DNA of 64,000 nt from Octopus sinensis (taxonomy: Eukaryota), in assembly GCF_006345805.1 (NCBI RefSeq), contig NC_043010.1, positions 46,004,001-46,068,000 on the forward strand, given 5' to 3'. The translations under genes and the position numbers were made by a program. The notes beneath the pieces were generated by a model. It made no database searches and was not told the DNA's origin. It was given only the letters and a program-made list of their open reading frames with translations. Shown one piece after another: positions 821 through 61,871 of this stretch (positions within the stretch are counted from its first letter, which is position 1; each line of letters begins with the position of its first letter).

Positions 821-3326
821 ATATATATATATGACATATTTCCACACGTTTTCCACCTACCAAATTTACCCATAAGCCATTGGTCAGCTTAGGGTTATAG
901 TAGAAGACATTTGCCCAAGGCGCATTGAGACTGAACCCAAAGCCACATGGTTGCAAAGCAAGCTTCTTTACCACAAAGTGCTTATCAAAATAATTTAAAA
1001 TAGAACTATTGTATGGCCATGTGGTTAAATTTAATGTTTAGGGTATTTTAGCATTGAAATGAGGTAATAATCCAAATAAGGCGATAATCTCCCAGTCTGT
1101 CAAATAACAAACAGCTGTGGAAAATCAGAAGCAAACAACAATGTAAAAATGAGCCTTCTGTTTACAAAGATGGTGCAACATGTCAAGAGACCCACACCTG
1201 TTTTTTCAGTAGACTCTGCCACAAGTAGATGACACCATTAGCAAATATATTGTTTACAACTAGCAAATGAACATGTGTAGACATAGAAACCTGAACTCTC
1301 ACACACACACACACATGCACACATGATGGGCTGCTTTCAGTTTCTGTCTACCAATTTCACTCCCAAGGCTTTGGTCAGCTCAGAGTTATAGTAGGTACCA
1401 CAAGTATGACTGAACCCCAAATCATCTGGTTGGGAAGTGAGTTTCTTAACCAAACAGCCATAACTAAACCTATTTTTTTATCAATAAACTTAAGGAAGCT
1501 CTTAACTTTGCTGAAATTAACAGCAAGAGAGAAAGAGGGTGTGAACCAAATAACAACACCTTAGCAACATGCAGGCCCAAGGAAACCACTTACACATCCA
1601 GCCTAAACCTACCTAAAAGACAACACTGCATAGTTACTTGATTCACACTTGCTTTTTTTCAATATTAGACCCTGCCAAAGTTAGACTTTCCTTTAGAGAA
1701 TTGATAAACATTTTCCTCTCTCACACAGGTATAGAAAGCTTTTCAGTAGACAAACTTAAGGTCTCCATCAGTTGTGCAGCCAACATAGAGAGAATCCATT
1801 TGTTGAAAATTCTTCAGGCTATTTTTGGTAGAGATTTTTTTTATTTATTCTTTTTATAAACATTTTCAAAGAAAGAAAAAATACCCCAAAATAAGGGCAC
1901 AGATTTTAGCAAGTATTTTAGATATTTTCTTTTGTTAGAAAAAAAGTATGTCTGTAATAATAGTTTTAGAAAGTAAAAGCCATTTGCTGTGGAATAAAAA
2001 AACTAGTTAATCATAGTTTGAAATTTTGTGTGATATTTTAGTATTGATATCAAGATAAAGAATCAAACCATTTGCAATCATAATTTTTTAAAAAATTTTA
2101 TTCTTTTCAAATCTACAATTTATTATTATTATTCTGGAAAAAAAACCCACAACAGTAGCTTATATAGGATTACTGACACACAGAACATTTTGAATACTAA
2201 AATACCAAAAACAATAAATTTTAAAATATCTATCACTCAATACTAAGACAGTTTTGAAATTCAATCTCTAAAGAATGTTAGATATTAAATACCCATAACA
2301 TTAGTTCTACAGTTAATGTAAATTTTTTTAAAACTACGTTTCTCAGGACCAAATATGGAAGTATTAAACCTTTACCAGATTACTGAGTCATGCTAAAGGG
2401 TAATTTTCCTTATACGTTGATGGTCAATTCATCATCTTTTGAGGATATCTCTTTTTCTTTCTTTTTTTTCTTTTACTTGTTTCAGTCATTTGACTACGGC
2501 CATGCTAGAGCACCGCCTTTAGTTGAACAAATCGACCCCAGGACTTATTCTTTGTAAGCCTAGTACTTATTCTATCGGTCTCTTTTGCTGAACTGCTAAG
2601 TTACGGAGACATGAACACACCAACATCAGTTGTCAAGCGATGGTGGGGGAACAAACACAGACATACACACACACACACACACACACACATGCACACAGTG
2701 ACAATCATTTACAACCATCACACAATGTCAAAGTAAGGAGACATAAACATACACACACTCACACACAGATGCATATACATACATATGCACACACATACAC
2801 ACACACACACACACACGTACACACACACACACGTACACACACACACACATGTGACACTATGCACTTCTGATATTTTTACTCGTTTGGAAAATATTCTTGG
2901 AATATTTTTTGTGTGATGTCTGTTTCTGTCTCTTTCTTTTCCTTTGCCTCACTTTTGCCTTCCTCCCACTCTCTTGCTCTCTCTTACCCTCCCTAATACT
3001 TTACTTCTCTCTTCATTCTGACTTCTTGTCTGTCCTTCTCTCATCTCCAGTCCTACAGGACATTTTCATTTTCCCTTGTCTGTCTTGTGTCTTTTTTTGG
3101 TGTATATGTATGTTTTATTTTGTTGCATTTGTTTTCGTCATTTTCCTGTACATTTGTTATCTATTCCCAGTGGCTTTTCGCCACTAGTGCTACCAAAAGT
3201 GAACAATATCAATGTTAAAGGCTTGAAATTGTAATGATCTTTTGGATGTTGTCTGGTGAGGAATAAGCTACGAATTTTCTGTTTGTTATGCTTTTGTAAA
3301 ATTTTCCACTCATGTTTTTGTTAAAT

Positions 3327-3376
<50 letters not shown>

Positions 3377-3439
3377 ATATATATATATTGTTACACCACA
3401 TGCGACCTCCCAAAACCACCTACAACACAACAGTTCGTG

Positions 3440-3700
3440 TCCGATAGCACACACTTTGACTACCCCTATGGCCTTATCCACCAATTTCTTTTCAAGACGT
3501 ATGCCCACACCTCTGCTCCATTGCTGTTACCTTCCCAGAAGATTTTATACCTATGTGTCATGCCTGTAAGGAATCTGGCTGAAGCTCCTTTCCATCTTAC
3601 TTCTTGAATGCAACATACATCAACACACCTCCATTCAAGTATCTCAACAATCTTGCTAGACCTACCTTTTAATGTGCCTACATTGACAGTGTAACTCTGA
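3440..3700 (-). mobile_element. RTE-clade LINE fragment, N-terminal AP endonuclease
   Basis: Minus translation TVNVGTLKGRSSKIVEILEWRCVDVCCIQEVRWKGASARFLTG..YKIFWEG matches the APE N-terminal motifs. Confidence 0.85.
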
Positions 3701-4106
3701 AAACTGGGAATGGGATGTGGGAGGGAATATGAGAAAGAGAGATGGTATTCAGCACCAGAAAAGAAGGTTTTAGTGATTGTTTGATAACAGACATGTCATA
3801 TAAGCTGTTCTCACTTTAACCAACTATCATTCAAAAATGTTAAGATTGTTGAATAGAAGGGTAAGTGGTAAAAAAAAGCATTAAAGTGAATGGGTGAAAG
3901 GAGCAAAGGATGAGAAGCATTAAGAGTTCAGGTTGCATAGAAAGTTAAGGAGTACTGCATAGCAAGATATCATTTGCACAGGTAATTAGTCATATTAAAG
4001 AAAGAGTGTTGGTGACATAACTGAACTTTAAGATATGTCATAGTTTATAGTATGTTAGTCAGAGAGAAAGAGAGCAAGAAATGAATAAAGACCAATAGTT
4101 AACTTA

Positions 4107-5582: not shown

Positions 5583-5807
5583 TATTTCTTTACTACCCAC
5601 AAGGGGCTAAACACAAAGAGGACAAACAAGGACAGACAAACGGATTAAGTCGATTATATTGACTCCAGTGCGTACTTATTTAATTGACCCTGAAAGGATG
5701 AAAGGCAAAGTCGACCTCGGCGGAATCTGAACTCAGCACATAGTGGCAGACAAAATACCGCTAAGCATTTCATCCGACATGCTAACATTTCTGCCAGCTC
5801 CCCACCT
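5583..5807 (-). mobile_element. SINE (OK-like family) with 18-bp target-site duplication
   Basis: AGCAATAAAATATATACC flanks both ends. The body matches copies at 19209, 20840, 52229 and 61082. Confidence 0.9.
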
Positions 5808-17262: not shown

Positions 17263-17831
17263 ATATATATATACAAAGAGAGAGAGAGAGACAAATAGAC
17301 ATACATACATATTTGTGTGCGTGTGGGTGTGTCTTTTATTTGTGTTTGTTTCACATACCTCATCACCGTTTGACAACTGGCGTTGGTTTGTTTATGTCCC
17401 TCTAACTTAGCAATTTGGCAAAATGACCAAAAGGATATGTACTAGGCTTTAGAAAACAAAATAAGTACTGGGGTCAATTCAGTGGTGGTGGTGGTGGTAG
17501 TGGTGGTGAAGACAATTATAATGATGGTAACAAAAATAATAACAACAATGATGATGATGATGGTGATGAATGCTGATAATGATGATGGTGATGGTGATGG
17601 GTTGATGAGGATGATAATGACATTGAGATTGTGATGATGATGAGGAGGAGGAGGATGAGGAGGACACAGATGATGATGACACTGATGATTGTGGTGATGA
17701 TGATGTGGTGGTGGTGGTGGTGGTGATGCTGATGGTGGTGATTTTGGTGGTACTGTAGCACTGCTGCAGTCAAGTGACTGAAATATGAAAAAGATGAAAA
17801 AAATTATATAATTTATACAGGTAATAAATAA

Positions 17832-18232
17832 CATAACTCCAATACCTTACTCTTATAATTTATCCTCTACCAAAGGAACTGAATTAATTGCATAAGAACT
17901 GCTACCCCTGAGATTAATTGTAATTAAGCAAAATCAAAAATATAAAAGTCTAGAAATGATGAAACCAATGTGGTTATTGAAAACTGAAACAATTACCATT
18001 TTATGGTGCCCTGGTGAAGGCAAGAAAAATTGAAAGCAAATACATAATGAAGACACCAGAATTTATACAGGTACAGGTGTGGCTGTATGGTAGGAAGTTT
18101 ACTGCTCAACCACATGGTTCTGGGTTCAGCCCTTCTACTATGGCCTTGAGTCAACGAAAGCCTTGTGAGTGGATTTGGTAGACAGAAACTTAAAGACACC
18201 TGTTGAATAGATACATACATACATACATACAT

Positions 18233-18238
<6 letters not shown>
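17832..18238 (+). repeat. ~400-bp direct repeat, copy 2
   Basis: Matches 10277-10680. Confidence 0.95.
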
Positions 18239-18273
<35 letters not shown>

Positions 18274-18298
18274 CACACACACACACGCACACACACAC

Positions 18299-18331
<33 letters not shown>

Positions 18332-19208
18332 GTGGGGAGGGGTGTTTTGTGTCTGTGTTTGTCTCCTATCACTGCTTTACAACTGGTGTTGGTGTGTTTA
18401 TGTCCCAGTAATTTGGTGGTTCAGTAAAAGAGACCATTACAAGGTATTAAGCTTTAAAAAGTCTTGGGGTCGATTGGAATATAAAAGTAATAACCAAACA
18501 CAAATAATGCACGAAGTCTAGAGAGTAGACATAGGAGTGGCTGTGTGGTAAGTAGCTTGTTTACCAACCACATGGTTCCAGGTTCAGTCCCACTGCATGG
18601 TACCTTGGGCAAGTGTCTTCTACTATAGCCTCGGATCGACCAAAGCCTTGTGAGTGGATTGGGTAGACGGAAACCGAAAGAAGCCCTTCGTATATATGTA
18701 TATATATATATGTGTGTATGTGTGTGTATATGTTTGTGTGTCTGTGTTTGTCCCACCCCCAACATCGCTTGACAACCGATACTGGTGTGTTTACGTCGCA
18801 GTAACTTAGCGGTTCAGCAAAAGAGACTGATAGAAGAAGTACTAGACTTACAAAGAATAAGTCCTGCGGTCGATTTGCTCGACTAAAGGTGGTGCTCCAG
18901 CATGGCCACAGTCAAATGACTGAAACAAGTAAAAGAGTAAAAGCGTAAAGACAGTAGTTGTGCTTGGTTGTACAGTGAAAACAAGAAATGAAAATAGCAC
19001 TGCTTAAAAAAATGGTTTCAAATTTTGGCTCAAGGCCTGCAATTTTGAGGGGAAGGGACATTAACTATGTTTATCCCAGTGCTGTTGCATATTTGATTGA
19101 CCCCTCCAAAAGAATTAAAGGCAAAGATGACCTTGGTAGCATTTGAACTCAGAATGTGAAGCTAGAAGAAATACTGCTAAGCACTTTGTCCAGTATGTTA
19201 ACAATTCT

Positions 19209-19683
19209 TATTTCTTTATTGCCCACAAGGGGCTAAACATAGAGGGGACAAACAAGAACAGACAAAGGAATTAAGTCGATTACATCGACCCCAGTGTGTA
19301 ACTGGTACTTAATTTATCGACCTTGAAAGGATGAAAGGCAAAGTCAACCTCGGCGAAATTTGAACTCAGAACATAATGGCAGACGAAATACCTATTTCTT
19401 TATTACCCACAAGGGGCTAAACATAGAGGGGACAAACAAGGACAGACATAGGTATTAAGTCGATTACATCGACCCCAGTGCGTAACTGGTGCTTAATTTA
19501 TCGACCCCGAAAGGATGAAAGGCAAAGTCGACCTCAGCGGAATTTGAACTCAGAACGTAGTGGCAGGCAAAATACCGCTAAGCATTTCGCCCGGTATGCT
19601 AACGTTTCTGCCAGCTCGCCGCTTTCTGGCAGATGAAATACCACTAAGCATTTCGCCTGGCATGCCAACAATTCTGCCAGCTC
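19209..19683 (-). mobile_element. Composite OK-like SINE insertion (tandem dimer plus extra head) with 16-bp TSD
   Basis: GTATGTTAACAATTCT at 19193-19208 and 19684-19699; nested within an older SINE. Confidence 0.9.
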
Positions 19684-20839
19684 GTATGTTAACAATTCTA
19701 CTAAGCCCACCCCCTTCATTCACTACTGCAGTAATAAAAATTGTCTCCAGCTTAGAAACAAGGCCAGAAATTTTAGGGAGAGGGGTTAGTTGATTAAATT
19801 GACACCAGTACTAGACTGATACTTAATTTTATTGACCTCAGAGGAATGAAAACCGAATTTAGCTTCAGCGGGATTTGAATTCAGAATGTTGAGAGCCAGA
19901 AGAAATATTGTAAGGTATTTTTTCGCCCAATATTCTAACAACAGGCATGGCTCTGTGGTAAGAACTTTGCTTCACAACCACATGGTTCCAGGTTCAGTCC
20001 TGCTGCATGGCACCTTGGACAAATGTCTTCTACTATAGCCTTGGGCCACCCAAAACTTTGTGAGTGGATTTGGAAGACAGAAACTGAAAGGAGACCGACA
20101 TATGTATGTGTGTGTGTGTTGTCCCCCACTACTGTTTGATGACTGGTGTTGGTTTGCTTGCATCCCTGTAACTTAGCAGCTCAGCAAAAGATACTGATAG
20201 AATAAGTACCAGGCTTGAAAAGAAAATAAGTACTGGGGTCAATTAGTTCAACTAAATTTCCTTGAGGCAGTGCCCCAGCATGGCCACAGTCTAATAACTG
20301 AAACAAATAAAAGATAGAAGATACTGCCAACTAGCTACCTTGTTTCTTATACAGACACATGGCTTGAAATTTAGGGAAAAAGAGTTAGTCAATTATATTG
20401 ATCTTAGTAATTGACTGGTACTTTATTTCAACCAACTTTAGGCTGACTACAATAATAGATGATGAGAAAATAGGAAAAGTAAAATAAAAGTAGACAAGAA
20501 AGATAACTGGAAAAAAATATTCATGCAGAAACTGATTTTAAGTCTTTTGTTGGCATATTTCTGTTGAAATACACTGCTTTGGTTTCAATTAATTTTGAAA
20601 ATAATATTGTCATTATTAGACTGCTATCTGAGACAAATTAACATGAAATTTTGATGGCTGATTTTAATTTAGATAATTTTTAAACATGAGATTTAAATCA
20701 TGGAACAAGAGGCAGTCTTGGGTGGGTTGGTATGAAAGGAGTTTAAGTGGTTTATTCGTTAAAATATTATACAACATTGGCCCTGATGTTGGCTCAAGGG
20801 AAACAAAATAAAATGACTATGAAGACTAAAATATTTCTT

Positions 20840-21070
20840 ATTTCTTTATTGCCCACAAGGGGCTAAACATAGAGGGGACAAACAAGGACAGACAAAGGGA
20901 TTAAATCGATTGCATTGACCCCAGTGCGTAATTGGTACTTAATTTATCGACTCCAAAAAGACGAAAGGTAAAGTCAACCTCGGTGGAATTTGAACTCAGA
21001 ACGTAACGGCAGACGAAATACTGCTAAGCATTTCGCCCGGCATGCTGATGTTTCTGCCAGCTCGCCACCT
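20840..21070 (-). mobile_element. OK-like SINE with 13-bp TSD
   Basis: TAAAATATTTCTT on both sides. Confidence 0.9.
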
Positions 21071-30825: not shown

Positions 30826-32110
30826 CGAGGGACGTTCAATAAGTAATGCCTCTGACCCACTTGCAGTTGTTTGATCCAGCTGAAATTTTGCATGTGCAAT
30901 CATTTATATCTCTATAGAGTAAGTGGCAAATTACAGCTCTGAATTAATTGTGGTTTCTGATTTACAGGTGTTTGAACCGAGTCAAGTGTGAAATGGAGCC
31001 TGTTGAGTGTCGAGCAGTGATCCGGTTTTGTATTTGAAAGGACACATACCACGGGAGACTTTTGATGAAATGAAAGTAACTTATGGTGATGATGCCCCAT
31101 CATATGACCTTGTAAAACGCTGGCATCGTGAATTCAAACATGGTCGGACTCTGTGGAAACAGCTCCCAGATCTGGTCGCCCCCTTCTGCCATTGATGAGG
31201 CATCTGTCGTCAAATTGAGGCTGCCATTTTGGAAGATCGACGCATAATTATTTTGCCAAATAGCCCATGAGGTCAAGATTAGTACCGGGTCTGTGGAAAC
31301 TATCATTCATGACCATTTGCATATGCAAAAGGTGTCTGCCAGATGGATTCCCAGGTTGCTCACGCCTTTCCAGAAGCAAGAACGCGTCGAGTGCTCGAGG
31401 GTGAATTTGGAGATGTGCCAAGAAGATGAGTCAAAATTTTTCAAAAGACTGATTACACAGGATGAAACCTGGGTCCATCACGATGATCCAGAGACCAAAT
31501 CCCAGTCAATGCAGTGGAAGCACCGTGACTCACCCACTCCAAAGAAGGCAAGGGTGCAGCCCTCCGCTGGCAAGGTCATGCTCACAGTCTTCTGGGACCA
31601 GGACGGAGTAGTGATGACAGATTTCCTAGCAAAGGGTACCACAATTGCAGGAGCCTATTATGCTTCACTTCTGAGGAAATTAAGAGAAGTTATCAAAATC
31701 AAGAGGCGGGGCAAGATCAGCAAAGGCATCCTCCTCCTGCAGGACAACGCTCCGGTCCACAACTCGCTTGTCGCCAGATCAGAAGCACAGGCGTATGGCT
31801 ATGAACTCCTCCCCCATCCCCCACTTTCCTGACCTGCACTCTGATTTTCACCTCTTCCCAGTCATGAAGTTGTTTTTGAAAGGAAAGCGTTTCCCAGATG
31901 ATGCAGCCTTGATTTCTGAATTCACGTTGAGGTTGGAGGACCAAGCTGGGTTCTTCTACAAAAACGGTCTCCTGAGCCGCATCAAACGATGGGAGAAATG
32001 CGTAACTCTGGGTGGTTCCTATGTAGAAAAAGACTAATAACTGTGCCAAGTTTCGTTGCTCTACTTCTATGGGAAGTGAGTCAGGGGCATTACTTATTGA
32101 ACGCCCCTCG
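30826..32110 (+). mobile_element. Full-length mariner element (1285 bp) with TIRs and TA TSD
   Basis: TA|CGAGGGACGTTCAATAAGTAATGCCTCTGAC ... GTCAGGGGCATTACTTATTGAACGCCCCTCG|TA; 2 mismatches in 31 bp. Confidence 0.97.
30993..32037 (+). pseudogene. Mariner DD34D transposase pseudogene (about three frameshifts)
   Basis: MEPVECRAVIR.., WIPRLL, TQDETWVHH, LLLQDNAPVH, PDLHSDFHLFP spread over several frames. Confidence 0.95.
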
Positions 32111-52049: not shown

Positions 52050-52462
52050 TTCTACTCTAAGGACAAGACCCGAAATTTTGGGGGAGGGGGGAGGAGGCAG
52101 TCGATTAGATCGACCCCAGTACACAACTGGTACTTAATTTATCAGCCCCCCCCCCAAAAAAAAGAATGAAAGATAAAGTTGACCCCAGCAAAATTTGAAC
52201 TCAGAACATAAAGACAGACGAAATACCTATTTCTTTACTACCCACAAGGGGCTAAACAAAGAGGGGACAAACAAGGACAGACACATGGATTAAGTCGATT
52301 ACATTGACCCCCAGTGTGTAATTGGTACTTATTTAATCGACCCCGAAAGGATGAAAGGCAAAGTCGACCTCGGCGGAATTTGAACTCAGTACATAGCGGC
52401 AGACGAAATACTGTTAAGCATTTCGCCCGGCGTGCTAATGGTTCTGCCAGCTCGCCACCTTT
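52050..52462 (-). mobile_element. Tandem OK-like SINEs
   Basis: Two successive gacgaaatacc-joined units, as at 19209. Confidence 0.85.
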
Positions 52463-53231: not shown

Positions 53232-53318
53232 AGATCAAGTGGGGTAATCTATATAAGGAGGTAAAACAGAAATAGTCCTCAGTCAGAAAGATGCCACCAC
53301 CAAATAAATGTCACATCA
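53232..53318 (+). repeat. 87-bp copy of the parvoviral VP promoter and start (58071-58157)
   Basis: Identical except 53304 A vs 58143 G; embedded in a (CAC/CAT)n tract. Confidence 0.97.
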
Positions 53319-54190: not shown

Positions 54191-55391
54191 TCTGAACTTT
54201 GCCCAGCCTATTCTTATTCTAGCAGCCACACTTACAGTATTACATCTTCAGCTGGCAAAAGATGAGTAGTTTCTGTATTTCAAAAGGCCAGCCTTGTCAC
54301 ATTGTGTTATACTGAATTTCCTTGAGAACCAACTACATTATGCTTTCCGAAATCCGCCCTCATGCTTTCCGAAATCCGCCGAAACTACACCTGATTATAT
54401 ATACACTTTAGATGAGTTGTAGTGCACCTGAGCACTGTACACAATTATTATTATTATTATTATTATTATCATTATTATTAAGAGTATGCGTGTCTGTGAA
54501 GTGCTCATCCACTTGCATGTTGATTTCACAAGCCGGCTGCTCCGTTCATCGGATCAAATGGAACACTTGTTATCATAACCAATGGAGAACCATTATGGGG
54601 AAACATAGTTTAACTGGCAAATAACAAAATTATGGGGTGGGAGAATGGATATACTGCAACAAAGGAATTAAGTTGTTGAAGTAGCATATAAACTAAAAAA
54701 TACATCGATGTCTCAGCTAAACTTGTTTTTAGATAGAATTGGCATAGTTTATTGTCTCAGTTTCGTATATACTCTTACTCTTTACTCTTTTACTTGTTTC
54801 AGTCATTTGACTGGAGCACCGCCTTTAATCGAGCAACTCGACCCCGGGACTTATTCTTTTGTAAGCCCAGTACTTATTCTATCGGTCTCTTTTGCCGAAC
54901 CGCTAAGTAACGGGGACAAAAACACACCAGCATCGGTTGTCAAGCAATGCTAGGGGGACAAACACAGACACACAAACACACACATGCATATATATATATA
55001 AGCTTTGGTTGGCCCGAGGCTATAGTAGAAAACACTTGCCCAAGGTGCCACGCAGTGGGACTGAACCCGGAACCATGTGATTGGTAAACAAGCTACTTAC
55101 CACACAGCCACTCCTGCGCCTCTTCCACTTGTTTGAAATACTAACTGGAGGAATTATGAAAATAATAGCACAAATAGATATCTTATTTGAGCTCCTTAGT
55201 GCATGTTCTCATGCTTTCGCTTGCACAAACAAATGCTCCTCATATGTGCTGAAAAAGCAAATGTTCATAGAAGTAACACAGGAATTTAAAACATCGTGAT
55301 GTCTCAGCTAAATTTCCTTTTAGACCAAATTTGCATAGCTCATTGTATGAAATTGCATATACATTGGCATGCACGCATATATACATATATG

Positions 55392-55492
<101 letters not shown>

Positions 55493-55493
55493 A

Positions 55494-55587
<94 letters not shown>

Positions 55588-55590
55588 ATA

Positions 55591-55661
<71 letters not shown>

Positions 55662-56569
55662 ATGTAGGTATGTTTGCGTGTGTGTGTGCTTGTGTGTTTG
55701 TGTATGTATGCATGTATGTATGCATGTGTGCATGTATGTATGTATGTATGTATGCGTGCATCTATGTATATGTATGTATATATATGCATGTATGCATGCA
55801 TGCGTGTATGTATGTATGTATGCATGCATGTATGTATGTATGCATGTATTTATGCATGTATGTATGTATGCATGTATGTATGTATGCATATATGTACGTA
55901 TGCATGCATGTATGTATGCATGTATGTATGTATGCATGTATGTATTTATGCATGTATTTATGCATGTATTTATGCATGTATATATGCATGCATGTGTGTG
56001 TATGTATGTGTGTATGTGTGTATGCATGCATCTATGTATGCATGTATTTATGTATGCATGTATGTATGCATGCATGTATGTATGTATGTATGTATGCATG
56101 CATGTATGCATGTATGTATGTATGCATGTATATATATATGTATATACGTATGTATGTATGTATGCGAGAGATAAAGTGTTAAATGGTGTGAGAGAAACAG
56201 TCAGATAAGTAGATGTACAAACAGATAGATCAAAGAGGAATGTTCAAAAACAAATAAGGATGAAATGAGGAATGCTTTGTTACTCTCATCCTTGTTTTCC
56301 CCCAATATCCTCAAAAGCATTATCAATGCATTAATCAGATTTTCTATCATCTGCAATCTAGTCTCCATACAAACTACATTCTAATAATTAGAAATGATAT
56401 TGTGCCTGCTATTAACCGCTTTGACAGGCAAACAGTTCAAGGGTTTCTTTTATGCAGTTGTTTGATTTGCTAGATATAGCAACCAAATAACACTACTGTT
56501 TTCAAAAAGGAAAACTATGTCGGACAATATAGTTCTGAAAGAAAAACATTGCATTAAGCTAAGTAAGGC

Positions 56570-56919
56570 ACTTGTGCTGGTGACATATAAGAGGCACCTG
56601 TGCTGGTGACACGTGAAAAGCACCCGTGCCGGTGACACATACAATCACCTGTGTCAGTGACATGTAAAGGGCACCCATGCTGGTGACACATAGATGACAC
56701 CCATGCTGGTGACATGTAAAAGGTGCTCCTGCTGGTGACATGTAAAAGCACCCATGCTGGTGACACTCTGTGGAGTGGTTGGCATTAGGAAGGGCATCCA
56801 GCTGTTGAAACCAAAGAAGATTGGAGCCTGGTGCAGCTCTCCAACTTACCAGCTCCACTCAGTCCATCTAACCCATGCCAGCATGGAAAACAGAAGCTAA
56901 ATAATGATGATGATGATGG

Positions 56920-56967
<48 letters not shown>

Positions 56968-57009
56968 CGACGACGAGATGATGATGATGATGATGATGTG
57001 ATGATGATG

Positions 57010-57073
<64 letters not shown>

Positions 57074-57080
57074 CGACGAC

Positions 57081-57146
<66 letters not shown>

Positions 57147-57210
57147 GACGACGATGATGATGATGATGATGATGACGATGACGACAGCGACGACGACGAT
57201 GATGATGATG
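56570..57210 (+). mobile_element. RTE 3' UTR with ~29-bp tandem repeats and expanded (GAT)n tail
   Basis: Repeated gcacccatgctggtgacac units; ggcattaggaagggcatccagctg; cccatgccagcatggaaa; long GAT tail. Confidence 0.8.
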
Positions 57211-57592
57211 CATAATTCAGTACAACTTTAGTGCGTCCTAATCAGGGGCATAGCCGGATTCTAAAGTTAGTGACAGTGAGTACATAAAGATAAGACACTG
57301 TAACACATACCAAACAAATTTAAACTCATTACTAATACATTTTATAGAAATCCACCAGTTTTGAAAAATTTGCTAGGTATGAACAGTTGCTCCCCTTGCT
57401 CCCCCATTAGCTATGGCATTGGCCCTATTTTTTTGGCAATATCCTTAACACACTGTCCTCTGTATGTTAGCAACCAGCTGGTTGTTGCTTGTTACAATGC
57501 TCTCTCCTAAGCAGATGATATTATATGCTAGTTCTCTTTAACCTGCAGCACATTTCTTCTCCATGTGCAACTTCATCACCTCATGTCAAACA

Positions 57593-57979
57593 TAATCTAG
57601 TTTCATTCAAAACCACAAATTCACAGTTCAAATTAAGGATAATCATCTTGTACCTCACAATGTAGGTTGTCACTTGGACAACCTACATTTAAAATCTTCA
57701 ATTGCTCCAATTGTTAGGCTACCTTAATCTTTGATAATCTTTCATGGTGATCCCACATTACATGACATAGCTAAAACATGCACCCAAAAGACAAGCCCTC
57801 CTCTTCAGGACTGGTAAATGCTTCAGATTCAATCAGTTAAATAAAGCACGGGTGCTTTTCAATCAGACCCTCAATTAAATTCAATAAGATGGTTTCCTCC
57901 CATCCAATAGACAGGAATGGGGAGATGTGAGTGGACTCAGAGACAGTGCATTTACAAGTGTAAGAGGATCAAATTATAA
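57593..57979 (+). pseudogene. Parvoviral capsid C-terminal segment, displaced upstream of the VP start
   Basis: A single frame with stops reads APIVRLP*SLIIFHGDPTL..PPLQ..K*STG..NSIRWFPPIQ*TG; compare AAV2 [42 protein letters not shown]. Two stops fall at conserved Tyr positions. Confidence 0.7.
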
Positions 57980-58088
57980 TGTTATATAAGGATCAGCATC
58001 AGTGATTTTGTCAATTGCAAACCATTGGTATATGATGTCATAGTCATGTGGATATGTCATGTGGTAGGTCAGATCAAGTGGGGTAATC

Positions 58089-58122
58089 TATATAAGGAGG
58101 TAAAACAGAAATAGTCCTCAGT
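58089..58122 (+). promoter_or_regulatory. VP promoter: TATA box and Inr
   Basis: TATATAA at 58089; TCAGT with its A at 58120 (31 nt later); ATG at 58130. Confidence 0.7.
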
Positions 58123-58129
58123 CAGAAAG

Positions 58130-59890
58130 ATGCCACCACCAAGTAAATGTCACATCAAATATGAGGCTGATTTCGAGCAACCAATAAAGAGGAAGGAAAG
58201 GATACCCCATACCAGGTTGTGATTTCTTAGGACCAGGAACTGATATTGAAAGAAAGAAATTTTGGGTACCAAAAAGCGCACTCAATGTTGCTACAAAGGA
58301 TCTGGAGTCTGCAAATAAAGACATCAATACTTTGGACACAGACAAGATATTTACTGATCACCTAATATACATTGGTCCTACTGGATTCTTATCTGCTGGA
58401 GCAATTGTTGGTAAACATATCTTGGATCTGATATCTACTTCAGACCACCAGAGGCTAACACTAATATCAATCCTTCTACTTCTGGCCATCTTTGTAATAA
58501 TATGGCTTTGGATGAAAACATGTGACACTATGAGCAGAGGTACAGGATCAAATGGATGGGAAGGCATGCAAATTGGTCCAACTGTACCAGGCCCTTCAAA
58601 CTCATTCAAACAAGCTTGCACATTCAGTAGAACATTCAGAATTCTAAAATTGGCTGACATGAACATTGCAGAAAACAAATTCAAACTCTTCCAAGACAAA
58701 GGTGTTAAAATAGCAGTAGTCAAAAAGTTTGCATATAGCATGGCAAATTCTATGGACTTCAACACATCATATTTCTTAATGCCATGGATTCAGTCTATTC
58801 AATACAAGGCAACTCTGAAGACAACAGTTTCGTACAGAATAGTAAGCATCATTTGCAAAATCAACAACATTACAGCAGAAGAATGGACAATCAAAAACAA
58901 TGACAAAGTCTTCATACCAAATCCAATGCCATATTTTAAAATATTCATAGACAAAGGACAATATACAATATCTCACATATCAAATTTGGGAGTCTCGCAA
59001 ATTCAACTGAGCTGCTACTCTGAATGTAAGATGCCAATGTGTTCATACTTCTACACATGCTCAAATACTACGTTGAAAGCATTTGGAGAAGAACCAAGGA
59101 AAGAAGGAAAAAATACCATGAAAGCCAATATATTACATGACTGGCAAGAAATGAAATCAATTAAACTCAGACAAAGAAATACAATTTACAAGTACACAGT
59201 ACAATGCTGAAATGAGAATTCTACTTCAACAAACAGAAAAAGAAGAATCCTTATATGACATGGGATGGTTGTTTCAGCTCCAACTTCCAGTGATGAATGG
59301 AAAGATGACTCTGTTAATACTGGTGAAATTTGAAAAAGAAAAATGGAAAAAATTAATGATGAGGACCTGAATTACACAGAAGTTAATTCTGTCACTTTCA
59401 ACTACCAACCACAGACAAAACATTAAAAAAAGGCAAGATAAATGCTAGTATTCACACAGTGGCAAACAGGACATGCATTAACCACACCTTATACTCTTAA
59501 GAAGACCTGCCTGAAATGATCCTCATCAACTTTCTGCTCATGACACCTAATGTAACTTTGACTATAATTTACTTTAACATTGATGTTACTTACACTCTTG
59601 CCATAGAGGCACAGCATGTTGCCATCAACCAGCCACAGAACATGCATTAGCCACTTTGATAGAACTACTTCTGATGCTTTAACTTTCCCAGGATTCTTCC
59701 ATGACCATCTAGCTGTCATTCAATCAGGCAGACACTTAAACAGAGAAATACTTGATATGGTTCTTCAAGGAAGAGCCATATTGGTCAATAACACAAATCC
59801 CCGTCTACATCTGAGCAGATACAATGGCAGATTCCTAAATAAACTGACATCATGCAAAATTTTGGGCTGATGCAATCAAGAAGTTAGCTA
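58130..59890 (+). pseudogene. VP1: Parvoviral VP1/VP capsid gene with decayed PLA2 (overall extent)
   Basis: ATG 58130 (MPPP) is out of frame with the PLA2 frame; stops and frameshifts occur after 59210. The 3' end is approximate. Confidence 0.85.
58188..59210 (+). CDS. VP1: Open stretch (340 codons, stop to stop) of parvoviral VP1: PLA2 remnant and capsid N-terminal half
   Basis: GYPIPGCDFLGPGTD..NVATKDLES..DKIFTDHL (PLA2-like); MSRGTGSNG; FLMPW; SYRIVSIICKINNITAEEWT..FKIFID (AAV RPKRLNFKLFNIQVKEVT..VQVFTD); SIKLRQRNTIYKYT (AAV SQMLRTGNNFTFSYT). The track ORF 58332 starts at an internal TTG. Confidence 0.88.
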   Translation, partial: RGRKGYPIPGCDFLGPGTDIERKKFWVPKSALNVATKDLESANKDINTLDTDKIFTDHLIYIGPTGFLSAGAIVGKHILDLISTSDHQRLTLISILLLLAIFVIIWLWMKTCDTMSRGTGSNGWEGMQIGPTVPGPSNSFKQACTFSRTFRILKLADMNIAENKFKLFQDKGVKIAVVKKFAYSMANSMDFNTSYFLMPWIQSIQYKATLKTTVSYRIVSIICKINNITAEEWTIKNNDKVFIPNPMPYFKIFIDKGQYTISHISNLGVSQIQLSCYSECKMPMCSYFYTCSNTTLKAFGEEPRKEGKNTMKANILHDWQEMKSIKLRQRNTIYKYTVQC

Positions 59891-59909
59891 ATGGAATCGA
59901 AAATTTTAT

Positions 59910-59945
59910 TATAAAAATTGATACAACAGTCAACTGCCACCAGTC
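59910..59945 (+). promoter_or_regulatory. Candidate NS promoter: TATA and Inr-like
   Basis: TATAAAAA at 59910; CCAGT with its A at 59942; ATG at 59957 in GTGATGG context. Could alternatively be VP coding sequence. Confidence 0.45.
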
Positions 59946-59956
59946 AGCTGCCAGTG

Positions 59957-61590
59957 ATGGAAGAGGACAGATGCATGAGAAGTGAATTTAACACTGCCTT
60001 CAAAGAAAACAGCAACAACAACATCACAGCTTACACTTGGAGTTCAAGCTTTGATACAAATGACAAGTAGGTTTGTGTGTCAAAAGAATATCTCAACTCA
60101 CCAGACAAAATCTTAAACTGCAGACATAGAGACACACACAAATACTTGCTGAGAAATCTTTGCTAAAATTCTTCCGCCTTAATATTTCATTAATGAGGAT
60201 CAAGCAAGATAAACATTGTGATGATATTCCTCACTTTCACATCATCACCTGCTACACTATGTGCCTGAGTAACAACTGCAGCTCCATCAAACTCAAGACT
60301 TAGTTGAAAAACAGACCTAACAAATGCTATGATATTGTCACTTTCAACCCAGAATTAAATACTGAATTCAAGTCTTATAAAAGATGGGTGATTGCACAGA
60401 ACAACATCACAACAGCTGCTCAGAAAATGTTCTTGAGCTATTTAACAGACATGAAGTACAAATAGCAGCAAGAGCCTGCAGAAAGAAATAACCATAAAGC
60501 AACATGATGCTGTTCGTGGTCAGCAGTTCAACTTTATAAAACAATAATGAACAAGTGCTGAAGACATACACGAATGATACCCTTCAGAAAACATGGGAAC
60601 ATATATACAAATCAGCAAACAATCTAATCAACATCATTCAACAAGCATTCATCAACATTCACAGAGATGAGAATAATGACAACATTCAAGCAAATATAAG
60701 AAGAAAAAAGAAAAGTTTGTGTTGATGACAAACACTTACTTGGATGTATAGACATCTCTCAACATCTTGGACAAATGGTTCAAATATTTCCCATTAAATA
60801 AATTCTCACATGGTACATTTGAGATTTGCCTAAAATACCTCCCATGGAAAACAGACTACATATCAAAGGACCCAGCAACCATGGAAATAGTTACATTTTA
60901 AGAAGCATCAAGAATGGCCTCATGAATTGTAGGAGAATTCAATAGCAGGCTACAGATAACTTTACTTTTGGCAGCCGTGCCACTAAAGTCTTCATTATCA
61001 CAGAAAAGATGTGGTTTACTAGCAACAATATAGAAGAGGCAAAATGCATTCTCAAAGGACCACCCATGCCTGAATACATTGGCGTATTTCGTCTCCTGTT
61101 ATATTCTGAGTTCAAATTCCACTGAGGTTGACTTTGCCTTTCATCCTTTCGGGGTCGATAAATTAAGTACCAGTTACACACTGGAGTCGTAATCGACTTA
61201 ATACCTTTGTCTGTCCTTGTTTGCCCCTCTGTGTTTAGCCCCTTGTGGGCAATAAAGAAATAAAAAAAAACATCAAGCACCTTTAACATAAGACATATTT
61301 GTCCACTCATTTCAGAGAACCATGGGACACAATCATTCATGTAAAAGCACAATCATGAACAGAATGCATTATGACAAAATGATTAGATCAATGTTAAGCC
61401 TTCAAGAATGGGTTAAAGTTAGAGTTGAACTAACTAATGTGGATAAAAGTATGGAGAGAGCACATCATCAAGTATGAAGAAAACAAATTCTCTGAAATTT
61501 ACATGACTGGCAAGAAATCAAAACTATCCAAGTGACTTATTCAACATGAATCCAGCTTTGGTTCACTCTAGAAGAAAATCAAATATGCAT
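59957..61590 (+). pseudogene. NS1: Parvoviral NS1/Rep pseudogene (HUH nickase and SF3 helicase), split by a SINE
   Basis: IPHFHII (HUH, 60232-60240); SYLTDMK (motif III-like, Tyr 60439); SLNILDKWFKY; NRLHIKGPSNHGNS (Walker A, 60868-60891, K to N); FIITEK (Walker B, ~60991-61008); EAKCILKG (B'); after the SINE IKH..EPW and IMNRMHY. Many stops and frameshifts; may extend to ~62105. Confidence 0.92.
61082..61270 (+). mobile_element. 5'-truncated OK-like SINE inserted in the NS1 helicase
   Basis: Family body gtatttcgtc..ccccttgtgggcaataaagaaata with A tail; NS1 frame GPPMPEY-IKH rejoins across it. Confidence 0.9.
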
Positions 61591-61591
61591 G

Positions 61592-61871
61592 CGTGGCTGT
61601 GTGGTAAGAAGCTTGCTTCCCAACCACATTGTTCTGGGTTCAGTGCCACTGCATGACACCTTTGACGAGTGTCTTCCACCATAGACAACCGATGTTGGTG
61701 TATTTACATCCCCATAACTTAGCGGCTCAGCAAAAGTAATTAATAGAATAAGTACCAGACTTTAAAAAATAAGTACTGGGGTTGATTCATTCGACTAAAA
61801 TTTACTAAGGTGGTGCCCCAGCATGGCCACAATCTAATGACTGAAACAAGTAAAAGATAAAGGATAAAAGA
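61592..61871 (+). mobile_element. Internally deleted OR1-like SINE at or in the NS1 3' region
   Basis: Head gtggctgtgtggtaagaagc joined directly to the 3' half; gactgaaacaagtaaaagataaaag tail. Confidence 0.9.

What the first reader, a model, noticed from the sequence alone, without database searches (positions are those of the whole stretch)
57593..61590. Scrambled viral gene order: VP C-terminus, then VP N-terminal body, then NS1
Seen: capsid C-terminal motifs (PIVRLP..FH..P, *STG, NSIRWFPPIQ*T) sit upstream of the VP promoter. NS1 follows the VP body at about the point where that C-terminus would be expected. Known: monosense parvoviruses run NS then VP. Inference: order C-B-A is not a simple circular permutation of A-B-C. 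It implies integration of a rearranged concatemer or defective genome (as seen for AAV integrants), a later local rearrangement, or a virus with a different native layout.
Basis: partly seen in the sequence, partly recalled or inferred. Interest (0 to 1): 0.8.

Follow-up and report, generated by a model that had tools for sequence, protein, structure and literature searches.

The report
Dead parvovirus copy, capsid-first gene order
This is a decayed parvovirus-like insertion in an animal genome whose capsid gene is whole and sits before the replication gene, and that unusual order is not scrambling but the normal layout of an apparently undescribed virus lineage found in cuttlefish sequencing data.

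Summary
The + strand carries a broken capsid (VP) gene at 58130-59870, then a broken replication (NS1) gene at 59958 to about 61584. The claim that the capsid C-terminus lies upstream, at 57593-57979, does not hold. The last third of VP, up to the final residues of its 606-621-aa relatives, maps colinearly to about 59500-59870. The upstream block matches no VP or NS1 profile, no Pfam family, no solved capsid sequence and none of 12 related loci, which meets the finding's own refutation test.

The element is therefore not "C-B-A". It is VP then NS1, separated by 87 nt.

Ten related short-read contigs, from nine or more sequencing runs, show the same order on one strand. So does an endogenous copy in the Acanthosepion pharaonis genome. 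One run is Acanthosepion esculentum. Spacers are 37-186 nt, which leaves no room for genome ends. Intact relatives have diverged under strong purifying selection. VP-first therefore looks like the lineage's own layout.

The window copy is dead. VP has several frameshifts and stops. NS1 has more of both, plus a nested host repeat. No paper in the searched library describes this lineage or this layout.

The parts
58130..59870 (+). VP (capsid) gene of the endogenous parvovirus-like element. It is full length relative to its 606-621-aa relatives but broken: about 2-3 frameshifts and about 1-4 stops. The N-terminal phospholipase-A2-type domain keeps its Ca-loop, but the His-Asp of the catalytic motif is gone.
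   Evidence: phmmer E 1.7e-32 to P0001. A colinear chain on my VP profile covers positions 14-611 of 611 between 58203 and 59843. The C-terminal region is in place. Alignment with relatives. Break counts.
59871..59957 (+). Spacer of 87 nt between VP and NS1.
   Evidence: Sequence read. The corresponding spacers in relatives are 37-186 nt.
59958..61584 (+). NS1 (replication initiator/helicase) gene, nearly full length but heavily broken: about 4-6 frameshifts, about 2-9 stops and one nested host repeat. The Walker-A lysine is replaced. The extreme C-terminus probably ends at the host repeat that follows.
   Evidence: tblastn of L001 NS1 covers residues 10-478 of 517, colinear, at 59978-61490, best E 1.4e-24. 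L002 NS1 gives E 1.1e-30. Homology resumes after the nested repeat. Weak direct Pfam Parvo_NS1 hit, E 0.053. Break counts.
61084..61266 (.). Host interspersed repeat, SINE-like and about 185 nt, nested inside NS1.
   Evidence: Copies at 81-93% identity lie elsewhere in the window: 19205-19391, 19393-19555, 20834-21021, 52228-52411, 5583-5758 and others.
58071..58129 (+). Leader directly upstream of the VP start codon, with a TATA-like box. Together with the first 28 nt of VP it forms the 87-nt stretch that is copied at 53232-53318.
   Evidence: Sequence read. 98.9% identical copy.
57593..57979 (+). It is not shown to belong to the element. It has no capsid or NS1 homology, and its base composition differs from that of the element. 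It is either host DNA or diverged non-coding left flank.
   Evidence: Searches are all negative. Composition. No terminal-hairpin-like fold, z = -0.79.
61499..61527 (+). Short patch near the right edge that repeats 59133-59161 of the element's own VP gene (26 of 29 nt, with 20 nt exact).
   Evidence: The patch also hits the VP of relatives at the protein level.
61585..61866 (.). Two host repeat families that mark the right edge of the virus-derived DNA.
   Evidence: Many copies in the window.

Best explanation
The region from about 58000 to 61584 is an old, dead endogenous parvovirus-like element. It is a germline insertion of nearly the whole coding part of a small DNA virus genome.

Shown:
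- A complete-length but broken VP gene (58130-59870) is followed after 87 nt by a nearly complete but more heavily broken NS1 gene (59958 to about 61584) on the same strand.
- A host repeat is nested in NS1.
- No capsid piece lies upstream.

Inferred: the order VP then NS1 is not a rearrangement. It is the native layout of the donor lineage, a parvovirus-like group seen so far only in cephalopod sequencing data. That group's members run VP (with an N-terminal phospholipase A2 domain), then NS1, then a small conserved ORF.

Inferred: the copy has no function now. NS1 cannot be made. VP lacks the catalytic His-Asp of its phospholipase domain and is interrupted.
For: VP identity and completeness:
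- VP hits P0001 at E 1.7e-32.
- The VP family profile is covered from position 14 to 611 of 611 in one colinear + strand chain between 58203 and 59843.
- Profile positions 499-546 hit at E 6.7e-9, and the last open stretch aligns to the very last residues of P0001.

NS1:
- NS1 maps colinearly to 59978-61490 and resumes after the nested repeat.

Upstream block:
- It is negative in every search.

Same order, VP then NS1, on one strand elsewhere:
- L001, L002, L004, L005-7, L008-9, L010, L011 and L012.
- The Acanthosepion pharaonis genome copy L003.
- Spacers are 37-186 nt.
- No contig has an end-to-start overlap that would signal a circular or tandem assembly.

Selection and family placement:
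- Intact relatives have dN/dS of about 0.06-0.16 with saturated dS.
- Relatives pass Pfam thresholds for Parvo_NS1 and for the VP1 phospholipase domain.
- The closest solved relatives are AAV Rep helicase, E 3e-8, and dependoparvovirus-type VP1 N-termini, E 4e-5.
Against: - All relatives come from host sequencing runs. None is in IMG/VR or the JGI metagenomes. Several runs hold more than one diverged copy, some of them broken. No free virus has been shown, and all could be endogenous.
- No terminal hairpins were found in the window or in the contigs, so the true genome ends are unknown.
- The capsid fold could not be confirmed. The model had mean pLDDT 34.
- The left edge of the element is set only by composition and by loss of homology.
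- The source organism of the window is not known to me.
Confidence: 0.82

Rival explanations
1. The locus is a scrambled integrant in the order capsid C-terminus, capsid body, NS1. It arose from a rearranged concatemer, from a defective genome or from a later local rearrangement.
For: VP before NS1 is unusual for parvoviruses. A 29-nt patch of VP is repeated near the right edge, and an 87-nt piece is copied 4.8 kb upstream. So some small-scale copying did occur around the locus.
Against: The capsid C-terminus is in its normal place. The upstream block has no capsid homology in any search. VP then NS1 is shared by all relatives.
Confidence: 0.03
2. The donor virus had the usual NS-then-VP order. 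A circularised or head-to-tail form was inserted once, long ago, opened between NS and VP. Every copy seen today, the cuttlefish contigs included, would then descend from that one permuted insertion by amplification inside genomes. In a variant of this reading the copies belong to a host-resident element rather than to a virus.
For: Relatives were found only in host-derived runs and in a host assembly, never in viral or metagenome collections. Single runs hold several diverged copies, some of them broken.
Against: The VP-NS1 spacer is only 37-186 nt, with no trace of two genome ends. Both genes stayed intact while synonymous sites saturated, with dN/dS well below 1. Passive copies would not do that. 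The contigs begin 180-340 nt before VP in each of the intact versions.
Confidence: 0.1
3. The order is an assembly artefact of the window.
For: The 87-nt near-identical copy inside a microsatellite at 53232-53318 is the kind of oddity that mis-assembly can produce.
Against: The same order occurs in independent assemblies from nine or more runs and in another species' genome. The VP-NS1 junction in the window is unique sequence, not a repeat.
Confidence: 0.02

Closest known systems
Endogenous parvoviral elements of animal genomes, such as the parvovirus-related sequences reported from molluscs and other invertebrates (PMC5013282)
   Same: It is a germline-fixed fragment of a parvovirus-like genome with NS1 and VP homology. 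It has decayed through stops, frameshifts and a nested host repeat. The mollusc sequences in that paper were also nearer to vertebrate parvoviruses than to densoviruses.
   Different: Here nearly the whole coding length is present, and the capsid gene comes first. I found no paper describing cephalopod copies or this order.
Parvovirinae, dependoparvovirus type (AAV Rep and VP1)
   Same: These are the best solved-structure matches: the SF3 helicase of Rep40/68 at E 3e-8 and the VP1 unique region with its phospholipase A2 domain at E 4e-5. Both genes lie on one strand.
   Different: The order there is Rep/NS then VP, as I recall it from the field. Similarity is limited to the helicase core and the VP1 N-terminus. 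The capsid body here gives no Pfam or PDB sequence hit, and the capsid is shorter, about 610 aa.
Monosense invertebrate parvoviruses (iteradensovirus and brevihamaparvovirus types)
   Same: A small genome of about 4-4.5 kb with both cassettes on the same strand.
   Different: As I recall, those run NS then VP. I did not test them here, and no named member came back in any search.
SwaBA-MePV-1-like 'megaparvoviruses' (PMC13426907)
   Same: A phospholipase-A2-bearing cassette lies 5' of NS1.
   Different: There the phospholipase sits on a separate extra protein, and the capsid gene still follows NS1 in a genome of about 6.4 kb. Here the phospholipase is the N-terminus of the capsid protein itself, and the whole capsid gene precedes NS1.

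Membership tests
Parvoviridae-derived element | NS1 with a superfamily-3 helicase domain (Pfam Parvo_NS1) | tested here: met
   Relatives score 53-76 bits against a cut-off of 20. The window copy aligns to them at E 1e-24 to 1e-30. Its own direct Pfam hit is weak, E 0.053, because the gene is in pieces.
Parvoviridae-derived element | N-terminal HUH-type nuclease/origin-binding domain in NS1 | tested here: inconclusive
   The N-terminal third of NS1 aligns between the window and relatives. A His-x-His stretch is readable in the window. The only family-level hit is a weak Rep_OBD match in L012, E 0.003, below the cut-off.
Parvoviridae-derived element | VP1 N-terminal phospholipase A2 domain | tested here: met
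   P0001 scores 31 bits against a cut-off of 23.9. The VP family profile hits the VP1 N-termini of solved capsids at E 4e-5. In the window the Ca-loop is kept, but the catalytic His-Asp is missing.
Parvoviridae-derived element | Jelly-roll capsid fold in the VP body | tested here: inconclusive
   There is no Pfam or PDB sequence hit for the VP body. The AlphaFold model from an 11-row alignment had mean pLDDT 34, so I ran no fold search.
Parvoviridae-derived element | Terminal palindromic hairpins | tested here: inconclusive
   None is present next to the genes in the window, and the related contigs show no terminal inverted repeat. Short-read assemblies and old insertions commonly lack them, so their absence says little.
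Parvoviridae-derived element | Linear single-stranded DNA genome of 4-6 kb | not testable with these tools
   The longest related contigs are 4.1-4.5 kb. Whether they are DNA or RNA, their strandedness and their ends cannot be read from the contigs.
Canonical monosense parvovirus layout (NS cassette 5' of VP cassette) | NS1 upstream of VP on the coding strand | tested here: not met
   VP lies upstream of NS1 in the window and in all related loci.
Rearranged or concatemeric integrant (as described for AAV integrants) | Blocks out of order or duplicated relative to the parental genome, with junctions between them | tested here: not met
   VP and NS1 each map in one colinear chain. There is no second VP or NS1 block anywhere in the window; the best E outside the element is 3.9-4.4. 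The only repeats are a 29-nt patch and an 87-nt copy.

The most novel reading that the evidence does not exclude
Cephalopods carry, and may still be infected by, an undescribed parvovirus lineage whose genome is laid out capsid first: VP with a phospholipase A2 domain, then NS1, then a small ORF. That is the reverse of every described monosense parvovirus. The lineage has entered coleoid germlines repeatedly. It left old dead copies such as the one in this window, and young copies or free genomes with both genes intact in cuttlefish.
Probability: 0.55. Interest if true: 0.72.

Novelty: new variant of a known kind. Interest (0 to 1): 0.58.

Why it matters
As written, the finding would have been evidence for integration of rearranged viral genomes. 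That is not what is here.

What is here matters in a different way. Gene order is among the most constant features of parvoviruses. A lineage that keeps the capsid gene in front of the replication gene under purifying selection would show that the order can be reversed. It would also raise the question of how the two genes are expressed. Possible mechanisms include an internal promoter for NS1, splicing and read-through.

It would add cephalopods to the hosts with a long parvovirus history. It would also give dated fossils for that lineage if orthologous copies can be compared among species.

For genome annotation, such loci should not be called rearranged merely because VP precedes NS1.

Tried and rejected
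- Pfam on 20 open pieces of the region gave only one weak Parvo_NS1 hit.
- A PDB sequence search with the longest VP stretch gave only chance hits.
- The word-indexed protein search with the window's own VP stretch found nothing. Its length filter probably excludes the 606-621-aa relatives. The exhaustive search and a search seeded with P0001 worked instead.
- Structure prediction of P0001 with 11 rows was too poor to use, mean pLDDT 34. I ran no fold search.
- IMG/VR and JGI metagenome scans with an NS1 alignment found no relatives.
- Searches for hairpins or inverted repeats next to the genes found only a 13-bp palindrome at 57659-57689 and no significant fold.
- Contig ends of relatives showed no circular overlap and no terminal inverted repeat.
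- The non-coding ends of relatives have no similarity to the window flanks.
- The tRNA and Rfam scans of the window found nothing.
- Literature searches for cephalopod parvoviruses or a capsid-first layout found nothing relevant. Only one run accession could be traced: ERR12945500 is Acanthosepion esculentum.
- I considered that the upstream block might be the NS1 C-terminus, which would make a circular permutation. I rejected this because the block has no NS1 homology and the NS1 C-terminal part lies at its normal place after the nested repeat.
Full report
**What is in the sequence**

The window looks like animal DNA. It has about 35% G+C and many microsatellites and interspersed repeats, no tRNA or Rfam hits, and a mariner-type transposase fragment at 31293-31829.

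Within 58000-61600 the + strand is A-rich, unlike its flanks. The longest open stretch there, 340 codons inside the VP gene, hits a 608-aa protein (P0001) at E 1.7e-32 in an exhaustive search of 1.84 billion proteins. Eighteen shorter hits came back as well. P0001 and its close relatives carry the parvovirus VP1 phospholipase A2 domain, at 31 bits against a cut-off of 23.9 (precomputed Pfam). A profile of the family hits the VP1 N-termini of solved dependoparvovirus-type capsids at E 4e-5.

**Is the capsid C-terminus upstream? No.**

I built profiles from five full-length VP relatives and three NS1 relatives. I scored every open stretch of at least 12 codons in the whole window on both strands, 3177 pieces in all.

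- VP hits lie only on the + strand between 58188 and 59867. They rise colinearly along the profile and reach its last position. The chain covers positions 14-611 of 611 between 58203 and 59843.
- Profile positions 499-546 are hit at E 6.7e-9 by a piece near 59500-59650.
- The last open stretch of the gene aligns to the final 72 residues of P0001, right to its last residue, at pairwise E 0.002.
- The gene starts with the same Met-Pro-Pro as its relatives at 58130 and stops at 59870. That is about 580 codons against 606-621 in the relatives, so VP is complete in place.

- the VP and NS1 profiles at E<=10;
- Pfam at E<=1 and E<=10;
- P0001;
- the coding and non-coding DNA of 12 related loci.

Its composition is C-rich with no A excess, which differs from the element. 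It does not fold like a terminal hairpin, z = -0.79. The quoted letters that remain in the finding are present, but they have no statistical support as capsid motifs. This meets the refutation criterion that the finding itself set.

**NS1**

The NS1 protein encoded next to P0001 (517 aa, locus L001) maps colinearly to 59978-61490, covering residues 10-478, with best E 1.4e-24. The NS1 of L002 gives E 1.1e-30. A start codon followed by residues like those of the relatives' N-termini lies at 59958.

A host interspersed repeat of about 185 nt, with many copies elsewhere in the window, is nested at 61084-61266. NS1 homology resumes after it. Two other host repeat families begin at about 61585 and mark the right edge.

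**State of the genes (counts only)**

| Gene | Frameshifts | Stops | Other damage |
|---|---|---|---|
| VP | about 2-3 | about 1-4 | catalytic His-Asp of the phospholipase motif missing |
| NS1 | about 4-6 | about 2-9 | one nested host-repeat insertion; Walker-A lysine replaced |

The counts come from two methods that differ somewhat. The copy is dead.

**Why VP comes before NS1**

I looked up the contigs that encode the relatives. In every case VP is followed by NS1 on the same strand:

| Locus | Length | VP | NS1 | Source |
|---|---|---|---|---|
| L001 | 4470 nt | 228-2054 | 2092-3645 | run ERR14857108 |
| L002 | 4409 nt | 251-2116 | 2275-3867 | run ERR3431203 |
| L004 | 4078 nt | 337-2157 | 2666-3778 (shorter call) | run ERR12921337 |
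| L005-L007 | up to 3807 nt | 182-2017 | from 2113 | runs ERR12921338, -40, -41 |
| L008-L009 | 3743, 3725 nt | broken copy | broken copy | runs ERR12921337, ERR12945500 |
| L010, L011, L012 | 2363-2896 nt | VP C-terminus directly upstream of NS1 | present | runs SRR11869386, SRR8281675, ERR3431203 |
| L003 | genome locus | 17305-19447 | N-terminus at 19543-19659 | Acanthosepion pharaonis assembly |

- The spacers are 37-186 nt, and 87 nt in the window. Two genome ends could not fit there.
- No contig has an end-to-start overlap of the kind a circular or tandem template would give.
- The intact versions all begin 180-340 nt before VP.
- Intact relatives differ by 17-50% in protein sequence with saturated synonymous sites. 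dN/dS is about 0.06-0.16 where it can be computed. Both genes have therefore been kept working while the lineage diversified.
- A small ORF downstream of NS1 is conserved among L001, L004 and L010.

The simplest reading is that capsid-first is the lineage's own layout. The window holds one old insertion of it.

**Hosts**

One run, ERR12945500, is cited as short reads of Acanthosepion esculentum (bioRxiv 10.1101/2025.04.22.649952). L003 is from A. pharaonis. I could not trace the other runs.

That paper says Sepia has almost no SINEs whereas octopuses have many. The window is full of short interspersed repeats, which would fit an octopod source. This is only a hint.

**What remains open**

- All relatives come from host-derived data. 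None is in IMG/VR or the JGI metagenomes, and none carries a name. Some runs hold several diverged copies, some of them broken. Whether any free virus exists today is not shown.
- A single ancient permuted insertion that later amplified is a rival. I rate it low because of the short spacer and the purifying selection.
- The capsid fold is unconfirmed.
- The left edge of the element is approximate.

**Comparison with what is known**

Parvovirus genomes are described as two cassettes, NS and VP, either monosense or ambisense (PMC13426907). From my own knowledge of the field, all described monosense members run NS then VP. I found no paper in the searchable library that reports a capsid-first parvovirus or a cephalopod parvoviral element. 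That library lacks most subscription journals, so prior description cannot be excluded.

The nearest solved proteins are AAV Rep helicase and dependoparvovirus-type VP1 N-termini.

**Verdict**

The "scrambled" interpretation is rejected.

I rate the locus as a new variant of a known kind. It is an ordinary dead endogenous parvoviral element in itself, but it is informative because it samples a capsid-first lineage.

I built no joined, repaired or consensus sequence. Broken genes were searched piece by piece.

Early in my working I traced the frame from the VP start codon and noted where it closes. Some script outputs and notebook entries give the bounds of open stretches that I used as queries, and these coincide with some stops. 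This report also names a few such stretch bounds, 58188, 59867 and about 59500-59650, as bounds of matched regions. No list of breaks is given, no change that would undo a break is given, and nothing was deleted.

Noticed in passing
window 53232-53318 (copy of 58071-58157): An 87-nt stretch is copied 4.8 kb upstream at 98.9% identity, embedded in a (CAC/CAT)n microsatellite. It covers the TATA-like box, the leader and the first codons of VP. It is far younger than the element, or it is an assembly oddity.
   Followed up: partly
window 61499-61527 versus 59133-59161: A 29-nt patch of the element's own VP gene (26 of 29 nt, 20 exact) is repeated near the NS1 end and right edge. It might be filler DNA copied at the insertion junction. 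It remains unexplained.
   Followed up: partly
window 61084-61266; copies at 19205-19391, 19393-19555, 20834-21021, 52228-52411, 5583-5758 and others: An abundant SINE-like host repeat of about 185 nt, one copy of which is nested in NS1. No tRNA or Rfam match was found for it.
   Followed up: partly
window 55020-55117 and 61587-61684: An inverted pair (98 nt, 83% complementary) brackets 6.5 kb that includes the element. Both arms belong to a host repeat family with many copies, so the pairing is probably coincidental.
   Followed up: partly
window 57659-57689: A perfect 13-bp palindrome with a 5-nt loop lies in the block upstream of VP. The surrounding 571 nt do not fold better than shuffled sequence.
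   Followed up: yes
window 55337-56217, 56567-56765, 56860-57241: Three tandem-repeat tracts lie just left of the element: TA-rich with a period of about 8, a 26-nt period, and a 9-nt period.
   Followed up: no
window 31293-31829: An ORF with a mariner-type transposase domain (Pfam Transposase_1, E 1.6e-23).
   Followed up: no
L001 3714-3914, L004 3844-4077, L010 downstream of 1911: A small ORF downstream of NS1 is conserved among relatives (E about 1e-10), with no Pfam family for the L001 copy. It is absent from the window copy, which ends at host repeats.
   Followed up: partly
L004 and L008 (both run ERR12921337); L002 and L012 (both run ERR3431203): Single sequencing runs hold two or more strongly diverged versions of the element, some intact and some broken. 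This suggests several insertions per host genome, or a mixture of free and endogenous forms.
   Followed up: partly
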